From: Bugula neritina
Lineage: Eukaryota > Animalia > Bryozoa
Length of the DNA: 64,000 bases
Assembly: GCA_964035545.1 (NCBI GenBank)
Contig: OZ037770.1
Coordinates: forward strand, 6,086,729 to 6,150,728
Direction of reading: 5' to 3'
Shown: positions 3,971 through 37,100 of the stretch, in pieces
Layout of the letters: each line of letters starts with the position of its first letter
Position numbering within the stretch: position 1 is the first letter of the stretch
Program-made: the position numbers and the translations under genes
The notes under the pieces: model-generated
The model's database searches: none
The model's input: only the letters and a program-made list of their open reading frames with translations
What the model was told of the DNA's origin: nothing

Positions 3971-4108
3971 CTTGTGCCAGCTAACTCAGTTAGAGAAACT
4001 AGACATAAGAGAAAGTCCTCTCAACACAGTACCAAAAGTTGTATCATCACTCACATCACTCAAAGAGTTGTGTATGAAGGACTGTAGATTATCTACTCTA
4101 CCAGAGAG
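3971..4108 (+). CDS. LRR cassette exon 1: [45 protein letters not shown]
   Basis: tacag| acceptor, |gtttgc donor, 138 bp, phase 2-2. Confidence 0.9.
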
Positions 4109-7100
4109 GTTTGCGTGTCATGTTTGTTTTGTGCCTTTTGAATCATTTGATTATTTACATGTTTATATACTTGTGCAGTAATAATATTAAAATATGTCAA
4201 TATATCCTAATATGGTAAAGAAATCTAATGCATTTTTGAAGTTTTATTTTAGTTTCTCGTATGCTGAAAACAGTTAGTTTAATTTATGTTTTATATTTAG
4301 TTGTGTTATGATGAGTTGTCATTCAATATAAATTTGGCCAAACAGACTAAATATAGCACACATTTTATACTGCAGCCTGTGTCATTTGACTCAGTTGAAG
4401 GAACTACAAATAGCAGGGAATTCTCTCAACACAGTACCAGAAGTTGTGTCATCACTCACATCACTTAAAGAGTTAGATATGTTGAACTGTAACTTATCCA
4501 ATTTACCTCATAGGTTTGTGTCACAGTCCTTTATTGTTTCAAACATTTAATAATTCACAACTTCAAGAGTAACTTGGTTACATAACTCATCAGGCTGATT
4601 GTTTTTATTCAGTTCAAATTTGTATTTTAAGTGGTTTTGGTAATGGTATCAAAACTGAACCTGTTATTGTAGTGGAAATATAACTGAACTTGTAAATAAC
4701 CTCGCATTGTTTTGTAAGTGTACTAGTGTCATGTTGTTTTTATTGTTTAAGAAATTAAGTCATTATTATGTTTATATGATTATCAAATATTGATAAACTG
4801 TATCATAGTATGTTTTCCTGTGGTTAATACTATAAAGTGAACTTCTAAAAATTATCTAATAGTTTGTTATATCATGGAAATAACATAGTTGTAAGCCATG
4901 CCATTATCCATCATTGTTGTCATAAAAAAATTTGATATTGAAGCGGCTGTAGTGAGTACGTAATACCCGCGTCCCCAAGCCCCCTTAGCCAATAAGAAGC
5001 TCGTCATGTGATAACCCCCAGCGATGTATAAAGTAGTAGAGAGAGCGTACTAGAGTAATAAAGATGTAGTGTTTTTAATCCGTGTGCTTTTATATCTCTT
5101 TATTGTATTTAGTAGTAAATAAATCTCGTCTAATCTTATTGAAAGCTCCTTTATTGATGTGGATACATAAACTATAATTACAAGCTAGGAATTCTCGCAC
5201 AGTAATTGCACAAATTACTACAGTGGTGGCAGTGGTGGGATCACTAGCTACTATATGAAGACGACGGGAAAGTATTAGAATATCATGGTCGAAAGTGCAG
5301 CTTCAACTGAAGAAGGTGAGCGAGACATTATCATAAACCCTCTCGAGGTCGAAAAGGAGGCTTATAGGAATACATTAGAGGCTCCCGTATTCACGGCCTT
5401 GAAGATGTTGAACAATTTATTCGGGAATTTCGTGAAGTTGCAGCCATTACAAGATGGCCGCCAAGAGTAGCCCTGATGAAGTTACGAATGGCACTGACGG
5501 AAGAAGCCAAGCCGTACGGGTGGGGACCTAGCGTAGACGGGCTCATTGCTACACTACGGGCCCGTTTTGGCATACCTGTTGCCGACGCCAAGTCCCGTTT
5601 GCAAGGACTGCTCCGCAAAAACATGTACACCGCTCCCGGATCACGCTACTCTGGTGCAGAGACTGGCACAGATCGCGTATAGCGATCTGCCAGAAACACA
5701 CAGACGGCGCTATACATTCGAGGCCTTTGTAAAATCCCTCAACAATTTGGACTTCCACCACCAGTTACAAACAAAGGGAGTAACCACGATCGAGGCTGCA
5801 ATCCAAGAAAGCAAGGCTTACCTAGGAGCCGAGCAACTCTACAAAGCGGGGGACACTATCCCGCAGACCTCTAGAGAACCAGACCACCCGGTCCGAATAG
5901 CTGCCGCTACCGCTAGCCCCCCTGTGGAGATAGAGGTCGACCGCTTGATGACTAAACTGGGACAGTTGGTGGCGACCATAACATACAGCAACCCAAGGGA
6001 GTACAAGAGACCAGCAGTAAAACCTCCCAGACCCACTATACGTTGCTGGGAATGCGGCACCAGGGGTCACCGTCGCTCGAGCTGCCCACGACTCAAGAAG
6101 CAGCAGAAACCCCAGCCCCCCTGGAGGCCCCCAGAGCTCCGCGGGCCCAAGCAGAGAAGAAAACAGGTGGATACCGCCAGGAGTCCGTACGGACCCAACG
6201 GTGCGCCCCCCACCAGTGGCAAACACCTCATCGAACCAGCCAACCAGGACGACCATGAGAGCCCTTCTCTCTACCTCTCACTAACTGCCTCAGTCCGCTA
6301 CCAGAAATGGAGCCGACCAGCGAGGCCCCTCAGGGCATCGGAGGGGATCAATACACTCCTCCGCAAGGAAACTCTCACCGGCCTTGCAAACCGCGGAACA
6401 AACGGGCACAGCCCCGTTCGGCCGAGACCGAGCACGCTGGGGGAGTACAGGTACAGCCTCACGCAGGTAGCTACTTCTTGCCAGGGAAGGTGGCTGGCAA
6501 AGCTGTCACCTTTCTGCTAGACTCCGGGTGTACCACTAATCTCCTCAGCCGTTGTGTCTTCGACACCCTTCCCCCTAGGGAGAGGGGAGCCTTAGCTCCC
6601 TATACCGGGGAACCAGGCACCCTAGCTGACGGGTCACGGATTCCTTTCTACGGTATCTTAGAGCTGACTGGGCGCGTCCGCGACCAGGCTATCCAGGAAA
6701 CCTTCGTCATCAGCCAACTCGAAGAGGATGCTATACTGGGGATGCCGTTCTTGAAGAGACACGGGTGCTGCATTGACTTTAGCAAGTCAGCCATGCTAAT
6801 GGCCAGCAGGGAACTCGCCTGTGTCGACGAGTTCAGTCGTCCCCTAGCGGGAGGCGTGCAGGTAGTACGGAACTGTACTATACCCGGCCGCTCCCGGGCT
6901 ACCGTTCACTGCAGAGTGAACAATAGCCAACTCTCGGGGTTAGCGGTTGTCGAAGGTGCGCACACAAAAATCCAACTCGCCAGCAGTCTTAACCGGCTGA
7001 CTGACCGAGGAGAGATCTTGGTGCAGTGTGTCAACCCTTTCCCCGAAGCGGTACAATTACCGTCAGAATTCATGCTGGGCCGCTTCAACTCCATCCAGGA

Positions 7101-34100: not shown

Positions 34101-37100
34101 TAATTCACCATATGTCTTTGCTTTGACTGTGTCTTGTCACAATACGTGTATTTCTTCAATATTTTCACTTGGTTGAATACACAAGCAATGTATACAGTAT
34201 TTATTATCCTTACACAGTAAATTACATGTATCACACATTTTATATTACAGCCTGTGTCAGCTGACTCAGTTAGAGAAACTAGACATAGGATGGAATCCTC
34301 TCAACACAGTACCAGAAGTTGTGTCATCACTCACATCACTGAAAAAGTTGATTATGTGGAGCTGTAAATTGTCTAATCTACCTGAGAGGTTCGTGTCACA
34401 GCCTTTTATCGTTTCAAATATTTATTAATTCTCATCTTTGAGACTAACTTGGTTACATAACTCAATAGGCTGATTGTTCTGTATTCAGTGCAACTTTGTG
34501 TTTTTTCTGTGGTTTTGGTAGTGTTATGAAAACTGAACGTGTTGTTTTAGTGGAAATATAACCGGAATTGTAATTTACATTGCATTGTTTTGTGAGTGTA
34601 CTAGTGTCATGGTATGTTTTTATTGCTTCAAAAAATCGGTCATTCATATATATCTATATGCTTATCAAGTATTATTAAAGTATATTATAATATATACATA
34701 TATATATTCGTTTTTGTGGTTAAACATGTAAATTGAACATTACAAAGTTATGTAATAGTTTGTTATATCCTGGAAATAACATGGTTGTGAGGTATGCCAT
34801 CATGCATGATTGTGTTGCAAAAAGTTTTGTATTTAATGATGGAACGATCTCTTGTGGTTTACATAACCTTTAGTGAATCTTTATTCACCTTGCGTCTTTG
34901 CTTTGACTGTGTCTCGTCGCAATAAGTATATTTATTCGCTTTTTTATTAGGTTGAATACACAAGAAATGTATACGAGTCATTTTAATTAATTTAGTACAC
35001 AGGTTCTTTCTAATTTTACTTGATTTCCCATGTTTTCTTCCTATTTATTCAGCTAATTCGGATTGCGGACTGTTACGAAAAAATCGTGACCGTCCGCAAT
35101 CAAAAGTAGCTGAATAATTAGAAAATAGCATGGGAAATCAAGCAAAATTAGAAAGAACCTTGACTATTTAGGTGTATTTTTTTTAATATTTTACTAGTTT
35201 TGGGCAAAAACCCATGTTCATTAGCTGCAAAACTGTGAAAATATGACCCATACAGTATAAAAACATATTATATTATCCTTAGACAGTAGACTACATATAT
35301 CACACACTTTATGTTACAGTCTATGTCAGCTAACTCTGTTAGAGAAACTAGACATAGGATGGAATCCTCTCAACACGGTTTCAAAAGTTGTGTCATCACT
35401 CACTTACCTTAAAGAGTTGAAATTGAACAGCTGTAGATTATCTAATCTACCTGAGTGGTTTGTGTGTCACAGCTTTTGTAATGTTTAAATATTATATAAT
35501 TCACATGTTTATGTGCATACTAAATAGTTTCGATTGGTACCCCATTATATTGCTAGGTTAAAAATCATGAAGGTATATAATCTGAAGTCTTTTTTGAGTA
35601 TTATTGTTTGTCATATCTTGAAAATAACATAGTTTTTGGGTGTGCCATTATATATATCCCGAAAAATTTTCCTAATTTATAATAATGCAGCCATTTATAG
35701 TCTATTATTATTTATTTACTAATGAATACCTGTTAGCTCTATTTTTTCCTTTGACTTTCCTTACTGCATAAGGCTTGTTCCTCGCGTATGTTTCCTGTTT
35801 GAATAGACAGGCATCGCATATGCACACACATAGATACACACACAGACATATATATGTATATATATGTATATACATATATATATATATATATATATGTGTG
35901 TATATATATATATATATACATATATATATATATATATATATACATATATATATATATACATATATATATATATATATATATATATAATGTATGCTGATTG
36001 TCAATCTAGTTGGAGTTCCAGCAAAGTAAAGTGCTCGATATCACGGGTGACAGAGCTAATATAATGTAGTGTGTTCAGATTGTTAATGATACATATATAT
36101 TTTATTTAAAAAATCTTACACGACTATAGAGTTTCGTGCAGTAAACTGCACTCCTCAGGTGTTAGACTAACACCTGAGGAGTGCAGTTTACTGCACGAAA
36201 CTCTATAGTCGTGTAAGATTTTTTAAATAAAATATATATGTATCATTAACAATCTGAACACACTACATTATATATATATATATATATATATATATATATA
36301 TATATATATATATATATACATATATATATATATATATATATATATATATATATATATATATATATATTATATATATATATACATATATATATATATATAT
36401 ATATATATATATACAAGTATACGAGAAACATTGTTGATTTATTACTTTATTAGGCAAAGTAATTATACGGATATTTCGGGTACCACTGTACCCATCTTCA
36501 GATTAGCAATGCTACTCTGAAGATGGGTACAGTGGTACCCTACCCGAAATATCAGTATAATTACTTTGCCTAATAAAGTAATAAATCAACAATGTTTCTC
36601 GTATACTTATTTATCATCAAATTGCTAGCTCGTAAAGATATATTTAAATATATATATATATATATATATAAATAAATATATATATATATATATATATATA
36701 TATATATATATATATATATATATATATATATATATATATATATATATATATATATATATGTGCACTCACAGACACACACACAGACATATATATGTATATT
36801 CATATATATATATATACATATATATATATATATATATATATATATATATATATATATATATATATATATATATATATATATGTATGTATATATTTATATA
36901 TATTCATATATATATACATGTATATATATCTATATGCACACACAGACACACACACAGACATATATATGTATATTCATATATATATCATCATCATCATCTT
37001 GCTGTCTGTCGTGTCCAACTATGACTTCTGGTGTATCATTAGTCTTTATCTGGGTCTGTCAAGTGACAGCATTTGCCATTTGCCGAGAGATATCCCCTTG

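What the first reader, a model, noticed from the sequence alone, without database searches (positions are those of the whole stretch)
3971..35457. Variation is concentrated on the LRR concave face, and half-exons appear recombined
Seen: the framework ([23 protein letters not shown], LSxLPE) is nearly invariant, while the x positions of LxLxxN/C vary. Repeat A: DIRES, QIAGN, VIGEN, DIREH, DIGWN, DVREN, HMRDN, DLHEN, YIEDN, YIGDN. Repeat B: CMKDC, DMLNC, NMSDC, HVGRC, EMWKC, DMSDC, NMSLC, DMWKC, IMWSC, KLNSC. The same A half DIGWN (exons 5, 11, 12) pairs with three different B halves. NMSDCKL pairs with VIGEN (exon 3) and HMRDN (exon 7). MWKCE pairs with DIGWN (exon 5) and YIGDN (exon 10). Established: these positions form the ligand-binding beta-sheet of LRR receptors. 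Inference: diversifying selection plus crossover or gene conversion inside the conserved central 40 bp (GTACCAGAAGTTGTGTCATCACTCACATCACT).
Basis: partly seen in the sequence, partly recalled or inferred. Interest (0 to 1): 0.82.

Follow-up and report, generated by a model that had tools for sequence, protein, structure and literature searches.

The report
Shuffled LRR exons in ROCO-caspase gene
A bryozoan gene for a probable intracellular sensor carries at least twelve near-identical tandem exons, each coding two leucine-rich repeats; they have swapped halves by recombination and differ mainly at the predicted ligand-binding positions, a pattern known from brown-alga and plant immune receptors but apparently not reported for this animal gene family.

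Summary
Twelve 138-nt, phase-2, AG/GT-bounded exons lie at exactly the stated coordinates. Each encodes two 23-residue LRRs.

**Variation.** Six of the seven most variable codons are LRR positions 5, 7 and 8 of the two repeats. There pN is 0.50 against pS 0.26 (omega about 2.6). The other codons give omega 0.3. The same positions are the most variable in three paralogous genes.

**Recombination.**
- PHI gives p=0.0004; none of 150 no-recombination simulations fell below 0.005.
- Upstream and downstream intron trees reject each other's clades (AU p from 3e-6 to 2e-40).
- All four combinations of intron types U1/U3 and D1/D2 occur.
- Exons 5/11 and 3/7 share 92- and 57-nt identical tracts between unlike introns.

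**Context.** The exons are the sensor domain of an LRR-Roc-COR-caspase gene. It belongs to a large family seen in bryozoan (Bugula neritina) samples. A gypsy-like element sits in intron 2 and a fresh Polinton in intron 9.

**Caveats.**
- Omega above 1 holds only for positions 5/7/8. The full xxLxLxx set gives 1.4, which is not significant.
- Breakpoints are not confined to the central core.
- This copy's caspase catalytic Cys is Ser.
- Nothing shows somatic diversification or alternative splicing.

The closest known analogue is exon shuffling in brown-alga LRR-ROCO genes.

The parts
3971..4108 (+). LRR exon 1 (two 23-aa LRRs; flanks U1/D2)
4376..4513 (+). LRR exon 2 (flanks U2/D1)
12254..12391 (+). 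LRR exon 3 (flanks U1/D3). Its 3' part is 1 nt from exon 7 although the downstream introns are unlike.
12696..12833 (+). LRR exon 4 (flanks U3/D2)
13083..13220 (+). LRR exon 5 (flanks U2/D1), a mosaic. Nt 3-94 are identical to exon 11. The 3' half and downstream intron are closest to exon 10.
14427..14564 (+). LRR exon 6 (flanks U1/D2), a hybrid. The 5' part and upstream intron resemble exon 3; the 3' half and downstream intron resemble exon 1. The donor is GC.
14835..14972 (+). LRR exon 7 (flanks U2/D1)
15594..15731 (+). LRR exon 8 (flanks U1/D1, a mixed flank combination)
18410..18547 (+). LRR exon 9 (downstream D3; upstream obscured by a microsatellite)
33491..33628 (+). LRR exon 10 (flanks U3/D1, a mixed flank combination)
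34251..34388 (+). LRR exon 11 (flanks U1/D1, a mixed flank combination)
35320..35457 (+). LRR exon 12, the most diverged (6 core mismatches). It ends in TG, which gives Trp across the junction with the Roc exon.
39732..39770 (+). Orphan U1-type intron end with an acceptor and no LRR exon behind it; probably the relic of a lost 13th exon
40657..42709 (+). Large exon holding 2-3 diverged LRRs, the Roc GTPase and COR. The donor was not located; the ORF closes at 42710.
43159..43410 (+). Linker coding segment conserved in paralogs
43634..43831 (+). Caspase (Peptidase_C14) p20 segment, first part
44255..44497 (+). Caspase p20 segment with the His motif. The active-site Cys is replaced by Ser (codon 44468-44470).
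45086..45232 (+). Caspase p10-like segment
45532..45678 (+). Last coding segment conserved with paralogs
5546..10367 (+). Gypsy-like retroelement pieces (PR, RT, RNase H, IN) in intron 2; not part of the gene product
18599..33242 (.). Polinton/Maverick-like element in intron 9; not part of the gene product

Best explanation
The region is the sensor domain of one gene of a bryozoan LRR-Roc-COR-caspase (ROCO) family. At least 12 tandem phase-2 exons each add two 23-residue LRRs to one solenoid, and a single large Roc-COR exon and caspase-like exons follow. Shown: the array grew by duplication of multi-exon blocks, with three intron families in a roughly three-exon period. It was then reshaped by unequal crossing-over inside exons, which made hybrid exons whose upstream and downstream introns belong to different families. 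It was also reshaped by short gene-conversion tracts of about 60-120 nt. The long identical stretches that can seed such exchange lie mostly in the conserved centre (nt 60-92) and at nt 12-32. Also shown: amino-acid change is concentrated at LRR positions 5, 7 and 8 (and 10) and exceeds the synonymous rate there, while the framework is under purifying selection. Inferred: those positions line the concave binding face, so selection favours new or diverse binding specificities, and recombination deals existing half-repeats into new combinations. Inferred from the architecture only: the protein is a cytosolic sensor in which LRR binding is relayed through the Roc-COR GTPase switch to a caspase-type output. 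In this particular copy the caspase nucleophile is Ser rather than Cys, so it may act as a non-proteolytic or regulatory member of the family.
For: Exon anatomy. Hypervariable columns. At positions 5/7/8, pN is 0.503 against pS 0.263 over all codons, and 0.257 within the same codons; bootstrap P<2e-4. The other 35 codons give omega 0.31. The minimum nonsynonymous:synonymous changes are 33:2 against 33:29, Fisher p=1.4e-5. Independent replication in paralog genes L002, L004 and L006: pN(5/7/8) 0.345 against pS 0.220, P=0.022, with top codons B8, B5, A8, B7 and B10. Recombination: PHI p=0.0004-0.0012; 0 of 150 no-recombination simulations gave p<0.005. Upstream groups are {2,5,7}, {4,10} and {3,6,8,11}; downstream groups are {2,5,7,8,10,11}, {1,4,6} and {3,9}. 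The cross-tests reject at AU p=2.9e-6, 1.4e-7, 2e-40 and 2e-9. Half-exon distances: 5/11 differ at 1 of 58, 3/7 at 1 of 48, 1/6 at 1 of 48, 5/10 at 3 of 48. Tract maps. Intron 9 without its insertion aligns end to end with intron 3. Block duplications of 0.7-1.1 kb. Gene identity: Roc Pfam hit; profile hits to Roco and LRRK proteins; model pLDDT 82.5 matching LRRK1, C. tepidum LRR-Roc-COR and the COR domain. Peptidase_C14 exons. The same architecture occurs in paralog loci. The Roc-COR exon against its nearest relative gives omega 0.22. In the model, strands fall on LRR positions 3-5, which places 5/7/8 at the strand end and the following turn.
Against: For the textbook xxLxLxx set, omega is 1.43 and not significant. 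Only 6 codons carry the signal, and tree-based site models were not run. No single triplet test on exon sequence alone survives correction (best nominal 2e-4, Bonferroni 0.25). Several half-exon AU tests are not significant. The concave-face assignment rests on the LRR register and on three LRRs of the Roc exon model, not on a model of the array itself. Function is inferred from domains only. The caspase Cys-to-Ser change, the GC donor of exon 6, a Polinton 51 nt from the exon 9 donor and a lost 13th exon could mean that this copy is decaying.
Confidence: 0.75

Rival explanations
1. Recombination is real, but the variable positions are only unconstrained surface residues. There is no selection for diversity, and the apparent omega above 1 is noise from six codons or from gene conversion lowering pS in the framework.
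For: The a-priori ten-codon set gives omega 1.43, P=0.145. Very few synonymous sites lie inside the hypervariable codons (2.8 per pair). Conversion demonstrably homogenises parts of exons.
Against: pS inside the 5/7/8 codons (0.257) equals pS elsewhere (0.263), so the codons are not simply older. pN of 0.50 is about twice pS, with bootstrap P<2e-4. The same excess appears in three other genes, with omega 2.1-2.3 in L004 and L006. The replacements are chemically radical (W, K, D, G, S, R, H, Y, C).
Confidence: 0.15
2. The array is a set of alternative cassettes. Because every exon is 138 nt and phase 2 at both ends, any subset can be spliced in frame. Receptor diversity would then be produced at the RNA level, by combinatorial or mutually exclusive splicing, on top of the germline shuffling.
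For: All 12 exons have the same size and phase. About 20 nt before each acceptor and about 12 nt after each donor are conserved whatever the intron family. Exon 6 has a weak GC donor. Alternative use of LRR exons is reported for brown-alga ROCO genes (PMC11378527).
Against: No RNA data are at hand. No complementary (docking-type) copy of the conserved acceptor element exists on the + strand of the window. An LRR solenoid normally needs many repeats, and paralogs carry 4-6 such exons in series.
Confidence: 0.15
3. This copy is a decaying or non-functional family member, and the pattern is left over from an earlier functional state.
For: The caspase nucleophile is Ser here but Cys in seven relatives. 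A 14.6-kb Polinton lies 51 nt after the exon 9 donor. There is a gypsy-like insert in intron 2, an orphan acceptor without its exon, and a GC donor at exon 6. The 5' end of the gene was not found in the window.
Against: All 12 exons, the 688-codon Roc-COR reading frame and the caspase segments are open. The P-loop, DxxG and the caspase His are intact. The Roc-COR exon gives omega 0.22. All the insertions are intronic.
Confidence: 0.1
4. The mosaic exons are artefacts of assembling a tandem repeat.
For: Tandem repeats with identical stretches of 45-92 nt can mislead assemblers.
Against: Repeat units differ by about 20% in their introns and are separated by unique intron families and two large unique insertions. 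The block structure is coherent: intron 3 matches intron 9 across the Polinton site. The same exon type occurs in an independent B. neritina contig.
Confidence: 0.03
5. Somatic, VLR-like assembly of LRR cassettes takes place.
For: The array consists of near-identical LRR modules with hypervariable concave positions.
Against: Every module is a regular exon with splice sites, lying in one orientation inside an intact gene. There is no incomplete germline gene and there are no spliceless donor cassettes. Nothing in the window resembles a deaminase.
Confidence: 0.02

Closest known systems
Brown-alga LRR-ROCO genes with exon shuffling (Zambounis et al. 2012 as cited in, and Teng et al. 2024, PMC11378527)
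   Same: Both have the LRR-Roc-COR order, LRRs on tandem same-size phase-2 exons, a conserved framework with variable x positions, positive selection at a few concave-face sites, a large lineage-specific family, and a proposed immune-receptor role.
   Different: Here the host is an animal (bryozoan). Each exon holds two LRRs (138 nt, or 144 nt in paralogs) rather than one (72 nt). A caspase-like domain follows COR. Intra-exon crossover and conversion are shown directly from the intron families. Alternative splicing is untested.
Animal ROCO proteins MFHAS1/MASL1, LRRK1/2 and the C. tepidum Roco protein
   Same: They share the LRR-Roc-COR core. The fold of the Roc-COR exon matches LRRK1, LRRK2 and 6hlu/3dpu/3dpt. 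The nearest named sequence hit is an MFHAS1 homologue (Mya arenaria, 21% identity).
   Different: There is no kinase or other known C-terminal module; a Peptidase_C14 domain takes that place. The relationship is very distant (13-16% identity in structural alignments). The LRR array is recently expanded and hypervariable.
Plant NLR and receptor-like-protein LRR domains (own knowledge: Cf-4/Cf-9, RPP5, L locus; also cited)
   Same: They show diversifying selection on the xxLxLxx solvent-exposed residues, and unequal crossing-over or gene conversion among LRR units that creates new specificities.
   Different: In plants the LRR units are mostly not separate exons, the switch is an NB-ARC ATPase, and the exchange is mostly between paralogous genes rather than between exons of one gene.
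LRR-AP-GTPase-COR conflict systems with variable C-terminal effectors (Kaur et al. 2021, PMC8195603)
   Same: Rapidly evolving N-terminal LRRs are fused to an AP-GTPase (Roc) and COR, with an effector in the C-terminal position.
   Different: That description concerns mainly prokaryotic systems and DAP kinase. I did not find a caspase listed as the effector of an animal member in the passages read.
Lamprey/hagfish variable lymphocyte receptors (own knowledge)
   Same: They have LRR modules with an invariant framework and hypervariable concave positions 3, 5, 7, 8 and 10, and mosaic modules made by copying between units.
   Different: VLR assembly is somatic, from spliceless cassettes flanking an incomplete gene. 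Here the modules are ordinary exons, and the mosaics are fixed in the germline sequence.

Membership tests
Leucine-rich repeat (23-residue 'typical' class) | LxxLxLxx(N/C)xL core repeated with a 23-24 residue period | tested here: met
   Two repeats of 23 residues per exon. A single exon aligns to SHOC2, LRRD1 and Leptospira LIC LRR proteins at E 1e-16 to 5e-27 in register.
ROCO family | Roc (Ras-of-complex) GTPase domain with P-loop and DxxG | tested here: met
   Pfam Roc scores 31.5 bits against a cut-off of 27. The GNTMAGKT and DMGGQ motifs are present. The family profile aligns across the LRR-Roc junction of C. tepidum Roco, LRRK1 and LRRK2.
ROCO family | COR domain directly after Roc | tested here: met
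   Pfam COR-A is weak on sequence alone (16.6 bits against a cut-off of 35.3). The AlphaFold model (pLDDT 82.5) matches Roc-COR 3dpu (TMt 0.62) and the COR domain alone, 3dpt (TMt 0.60-0.62, E 1e-8 to 2e-9).
Caspase (Peptidase_C14) | Caspase fold segments p20 and p10 | tested here: met
   Exon-wise Pfam hits at 5e-9 and 4e-9 (p20), and a weak 0.027 (p10). The segments are conserved in paralog loci with precomputed Peptidase_C14 hits.
Caspase (Peptidase_C14) | Catalytic His-Cys dyad | tested here: not met
   The His motif MTHGG is present. At the Cys position this copy has Ser (AGC, 44468-44470), whereas L001, L002, L004, L005, L006, L008 and L009 have Cys. The domain is caspase-like, but this copy is not predicted to be an active cysteine protease.
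Brown-alga-type shuffled LRR-ROCO genes | Each LRR on its own 72-bp phase-2 exon | tested here: not met
   The phase is 2, as in the algae. The unit, however, is 138 nt with two LRRs, or 144 nt in paralogs.
Brown-alga-type shuffled LRR-ROCO genes | Positive selection at a few concave-face sites of the LRR | tested here: met
   Omega is about 2.6 at positions 5/7/8, replicated in paralogs. The counting method was used; PAML or HyPhy site models were not run.
Brown-alga-type shuffled LRR-ROCO genes | Alternative splicing of LRR exons | not testable with these tools
   No transcript data are available for the source organism.
Dscam-like mutually exclusive exon cluster | Docking and selector complementary intron elements, and one exon per transcript | tested here: inconclusive
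   Only one element was tried. The conserved acceptor-proximal 19-mer has no complementary copy on the + strand. RNA evidence is lacking.
VLR-type somatic LRR assembly | Incomplete germline gene flanked by spliceless LRR cassettes | tested here: not met
   All 12 modules carry acceptor and donor sites and lie in series upstream of the Roc-COR exon.
NLR (STAND NTPase-LRR) | NACHT or NB-ARC ATPase as the switch domain | tested here: not met
   The only NTPase found is Roc, and the LRRs are N-terminal to it.
Polinton/Maverick (the insertion in intron 9) | Long TIRs, 6-bp target-site duplication, double-jelly-roll capsid, A32-type ATPase, rve integrase, protein-primed PolB | tested here: inconclusive
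   The TIRs are 369 nt at 99%. The termini are AG...CT with a CACATC duplication. DJR capsid scores 2e-56; A32 ATPase and rve integrase are present. No PolB domain was detected in the 852-aa ORF.

The most novel reading that the evidence does not exclude
Bryozoans carry a large family of single-chain sensor-switch-protease receptors (LRR-Roc-COR-caspase). Their binding surface is diversified by shuffling of two-LRR exon cassettes in the germline, and, because all cassettes are in-frame and interchangeable, also by combinatorial splicing. Such a system could serve pathogen sensing or the still unexplained colony fusion and rejection recognition of these animals. It would be an animal counterpart of the brown-alga ROCO repertoire.
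Probability: 0.15. Interest if true: 0.85.

Novelty: new variant of a known kind. Interest (0 to 1): 0.6.

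Why it matters
LRR receptors that combine a fixed scaffold with fast-changing contact residues are the basis of innate recognition in plants and animals, and of adaptive recognition in jawless fish. This locus shows the mechanics unusually clearly. Three recognisable intron families make it possible to read off which exons are hybrids and where conversion tracts end. 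It also points to an unstudied animal receptor family in which a Roc-COR GTPase, rather than a NACHT ATPase, links LRRs to a caspase-type domain in one chain. If the family is expressed and polymorphic, it gives bryozoan immunity and allorecognition a concrete candidate. It would also provide a second, independent case, after brown algae, of ROCO genes recruited as diversified receptors.

Tried and rejected
- **Triplet maximum-chi-square scan on exon sequence alone.** The best nominal p was 2e-4, but none of 1230 triples survives Bonferroni correction, so it is not used as proof.
- **Half-exon trees alone.** They are poorly resolved, and only 3 of 7 cross-tests reach p<0.05.
- **Nucleotide-level conservation of the central core.** Its pS is 0.23 against 0.26-0.31 elsewhere. 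This is no clear sign of selection on the DNA or RNA itself.
- **Two metagenome scans for more exons of this framework.** The IUPAC core pattern and the peptide patterns both found nothing. One such exon was later found in L007 by HMM.
- **More LRR exons in the window.** There are none in 1-3970 or 35458-40600. Only an orphan acceptor lies at 39732-39770.
- **N-terminal exons.** Nothing before 3900 is conserved with the paralog loci.
- **Rfam.** No match.
- **LTRs of the gypsy-like insert.** None of 60 nt or more.
- **PolB of the Polinton.** Not detected.
- **Literature.** No paper holds both 'Roc-COR' and 'Peptidase_C14'.

Steps deliberately not done:
All protein searches were made exon by exon, by reference.
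- The large representative-protein search was not run, because the word search and the family scans had already settled the protein's identity.

The window is not human-like.

Full report
**What is there**

The window is AT-rich eukaryotic DNA, about 31% G+C outside two inserts. It is not human-like. A 12th copy has 6 mismatches. Around each copy lies an open 138-nt segment bounded by AG and GT; exon 6 alone has a GC donor. It reads as 1 base, 45 codons and 2 bases, so every exon is phase 2 at both ends. Each encodes two 23-residue leucine-rich repeats. The coordinates 3971-35457 are exactly the first base of exon 1 and the last base of exon 12. A profile of the 12 peptides finds these 12 and nothing else in the window. 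One exon alone aligns in register with the 23-residue LRRs of SHOC2, LRRD1 and Leptospira LIC proteins.

**The gene**

- **Roc-COR exon.** A 688-codon open frame lies downstream on the same strand (40646-42709, with the acceptor at 40656/40657). It starts with two or three diverged LRRs and continues into a Roc GTPase (Pfam 31.5 bits, with P-loop and DxxG present). A profile of this exon and 18 relatives aligns across the LRR-Roc junction of C. tepidum Roco, LRRK1 and LRRK2. An AlphaFold model (pLDDT 82.5, pTM 0.80) matches LRRK1, the C. tepidum LRR-Roc-COR crystal structure, LRRK2, the RocCOR tandem and the isolated COR domain. This settles a Roc-COR tandem that sequence alone left weak.
- **Caspase exons.** Further downstream, four coding segments conserved with paralogs carry Peptidase_C14.
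- **Family.** The word search found 43 related Roc-COR exons at 76-31% identity. Almost all come from JGI samples whose contigs carry the prefix AY690838. That prefix is the accession of the Bugula neritina mitochondrial genome. Another relative comes from an ENA metagenome labelled BRYA16. So the source is a bryozoan, and the gene belongs to a large family.
- **Shared layout.** Loci L002, L004, L005, L008 and L009 show the same order, with the Roc-COR exon followed by caspase exons. Where upstream sequence is present (L002, L004, L005), LRR exons come first.
- **Constraint.** Against its nearest relative (L007) the Roc-COR exon has dS 0.63 and omega 0.22, so it is constrained.
- **Active site.** In this copy the caspase active-site Cys is Ser (AGC at 44468-44470). 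Seven relatives keep Cys, and the His motif is kept here too.

**Variation**

Of 45 full codons, 15 are invariant. The seven most variable are B5, B7, B8, A7, B10, A8 and A5. That is all six copies of positions 5, 7 and 8 of LxxLxLxx(N/C), plus B10. By my arithmetic the chance of this is 9e-7.

| Codon set | pN | pS | omega | Bootstrap over codons |
|---|---|---|---|---|
| Positions 5/7/8 (6 codons) | 0.503 | 0.263 over all codons; 0.257 within these codons | about 2.6 | P<2e-4 |
| Textbook xxLxLxx set (10 codons) | 0.345 | 0.263 | 1.43 | P=0.145, not significant |
| Remaining 35 codons | 0.093 | 0.263 | 0.31 | not applicable |

These are Nei-Gojobori counts pooled over the 66 exon pairs. The minimum replacement:silent changes are 33:2 in the concave set against 33:29 elsewhere (Fisher 1.4e-5).

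Paralog genes L002, L004 and L006 have 15 exons of 144 nt, also phase 2. There pN(5/7/8) is 0.345 against pS 0.220 (P=0.022). Omega is about 2.1-2.3 in L004 and L006, and the top codons are again B8, B5, A8, B7 and B10.

In the model of the Roc exon, the strands of its own LRRs fall on repeat positions 3-5. Positions 5, 7 and 8 are therefore the strand end and the turn that follows. In solved LRR receptors (own knowledge, Kobe and Kajava 2001) that is the concave, ligand-contacting side. I did not model the array itself, because that would need a joined spliced protein, which the operators excluded.

**Recombination**

- **Global test.** The PHI test on the 138-nt alignment gives p=0.0004-0.0012. 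I simulated 150 alignments without recombination on the same tree with the same clustered site rates. Of these, 2.7% gave p<0.05 and none gave p<0.005.
- **Intron families.** The stronger evidence lies in the introns.
  - Upstream flanks fall into U1 {3,6,8,11, and by longer matches 1 and 12}, U2 {2,5,7} and U3 {4,10}.
  - Downstream flanks fall into D1 {2,5,7,8,10,11}, D2 {1,4,6} and D3 {3,9}.
  - Each partition rejects the other's groups, with AU p of 2.9e-6, 1.4e-7, 2e-40 and 2e-9.
- **Array layout.** Read as whole introns there are three families: Ia (D2..U2), Ib (D1..U1) and Ic (D3..U3). The array reads E1-Ia-E2-Ib-E3-Ic-E4-Ia-E5-Ib-E6-Ia-E7-Ib-E8-?-E9-Ic-E10-Ib-E11-Ib-E12.
- **Block duplication.** Blocks of 0.7-1.1 kb are duplicated at 78-82% identity: exons (1,2) with (6,7), (4,5) with (6,7), and (7,8) with (10,11). 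Intron 9, once its insertion is set aside, aligns end to end with intron 3.
- **Mixed flank combinations.** A pure block duplication would give each exon class one fixed pair of flanks. Instead U1/D2, U1/D1, U3/D2 and U3/D1 all occur, which requires exchange between the two flanks, that is, within the exon. Exon 6 is a clear hybrid. Its upstream intron and first 45 nt or so follow exon 3. Its 3' half (1 difference in 48) and downstream intron follow exon 1.
- **Short conversion tracts.**
  - Exons 5 and 11 are identical over nt 3-94, although their upstream introns are unrelated and their 3' halves differ at 11 of 48 sites.
  - Exons 3 and 7 share a 57-nt identical run (nt 68-124) and differ at 1 of 48 sites in the 3' half, although their downstream introns are of different families.
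  - Exons 5 and 10 share the 3' half and the downstream intron.
- **Where exchange can start.** The longest identical run between exon pairs lies most often at nt 60-92, with a second block at nt 12-32. The conserved centre is thus the main, but not the only, substrate.
- **Weaker tests.** Triplet tests on exon sequence alone fail Bonferroni correction. Half-exon trees are only partly decisive.

**Origin of the array**

All 12 exons form one clade apart from the 144-nt exons of the other genes (SH-aLRT 99). The single 138-nt exon on L007, the closest relative, nests among them. It differs from exon 7 at only 2 of 48 sites in the 3' half. The 138-nt framework is therefore older than this gene's split from L007. 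Each gene of the family keeps its own homogeneous exon set.

**How it most likely works**

Shown:
- tandem, in-frame two-LRR exons;
- block duplication;
- intra-exon crossover and short conversion;
- an excess of replacement changes at positions 5/7/8;
- a constrained Roc-COR exon;
- a caspase-like tail.

Inferred:
- The variable residues form the binding face.
- Selection favours new specificities.
- Recombination recombines half-repeats while keeping the scaffold uniform.
- The protein is a cytosolic sensor that couples LRR binding through a GTPase switch to a caspase-type output.

This copy, with Ser in place of the nucleophile, may be a non-proteolytic member or may be on its way to decay.

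**Comparison with what is known**

The closest description is the brown-alga LRR-ROCO family. It has 72-bp phase-2 exons with one LRR each, intense exon shuffling, four positively selected concave sites and alternative splicing (PMC11378527). The present case shares the logic and even the intron phase. It differs in four ways: it is in an animal, its exons hold two repeats, it has a caspase-like domain after COR, and it offers direct evidence for hybrid exons. LRR-AP-GTPase-COR proteins with variable effectors are a recognised class of conflict systems (PMC8195603). I found no paper that combines Roc-COR with Peptidase_C14, but I did not test absence exhaustively. The array is not VLR-like, because its modules are ordinary exons. 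It is not an NLR, because the switch is Roc. A Dscam-like use of the exons cannot be judged without RNA data.

**Other features of the window**

- Intron 2 holds GC-rich gypsy-like pol pieces.
- Intron 9 holds a 14.6-kb Polinton-like element with 369-nt TIRs at 99% identity and a 6-bp duplication. It starts 51 nt after the exon 9 donor.
- An orphan U1-type acceptor at 39732-39770 has no exon behind it.

**Limits**

- No transcripts were available.
- The large representative search was not run.
- The 5' end of the gene was not found, so 12 exons is a minimum.

Noticed in passing
window 18599-33242: A Polinton/Maverick-like element lies in intron 9, starting 51 nt after the exon 9 donor. It has 369-nt TIRs that are 99% complementary, AG...CT termini and a 6-bp target duplication (CACATC). 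It carries long open ORFs for a double-jelly-roll capsid, an A32-type ATPase and an rve-chromo integrase with a PLA2-like N-terminus. It looks like a very recent insertion.
   Followed up: partly
window 20445-23000 (-): The largest ORF of that element (852 aa) has no protein-primed PolB signature. It gives only a weak Endonuclease VII hit and no PDB match, so the element's replication protein is unidentified.
   Followed up: partly
window 5546-10367 (+): A gypsy-like retroelement (protease, RT, RNase H, integrase) lies in intron 2 at 58% G+C, against 31% around it. It is split into five overlapping ORF pieces, and no LTR pair of 60 nt or more was found.
   Followed up: partly
window 44468-44470: The caspase active-site Cys codon reads AGC (Ser) in this gene. 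Seven related loci (L001, L002, L004, L005, L006, L008, L009) have TGT or TGC, and L009 even has the canonical QACxG motif. The catalytic His motif is kept.
   Followed up: yes
window 39732-39770: A 39-nt copy of the U1-type intron end with its acceptor has no LRR exon after it. The next 700 nt are unique in the window and in the fetched loci. Homology to the L007 intron resumes only about 200 nt before the Roc exon. A 13th exon seems to have been lost.
   Followed up: yes
window 14565-14566: Exon 6 has a GC rather than a GT donor, in a weak context. Skipping it would keep the reading frame.
   Followed up: no
window 3843-3924, 18221-18325, 35848-36935, 39457-39731: Long AT/TA microsatellites sit directly upstream of exons 1 and 9, and in intron 12 next to the orphan acceptor. 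They have replaced the intron sequence that would tell the flank type of exons 1 and 9.
   Followed up: no
L007 1247-1384 versus window exon 7: The 3' half of the single 138-nt exon on the B. neritina contig differs from window exon 7 at only 2 of 48 sites, while the adjoining Roc-COR exons have dS 0.63. This could be exchange between genes or strong constraint. Whether the two loci are from the same species is unknown.
   Followed up: partly
window 694-1080 (-), 37630-38226 (-): Further retroelement fragments are present: integrase-like and zinc-finger motifs near the window start, and an RT fragment in intron 12.
   Followed up: partly
L002, L004, L006 (paralog loci): Each paralog has its own homogeneous set of 144-nt two-LRR exons (25+23 residues). 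This points to concerted evolution or separate expansions gene by gene across the family.
   Followed up: partly
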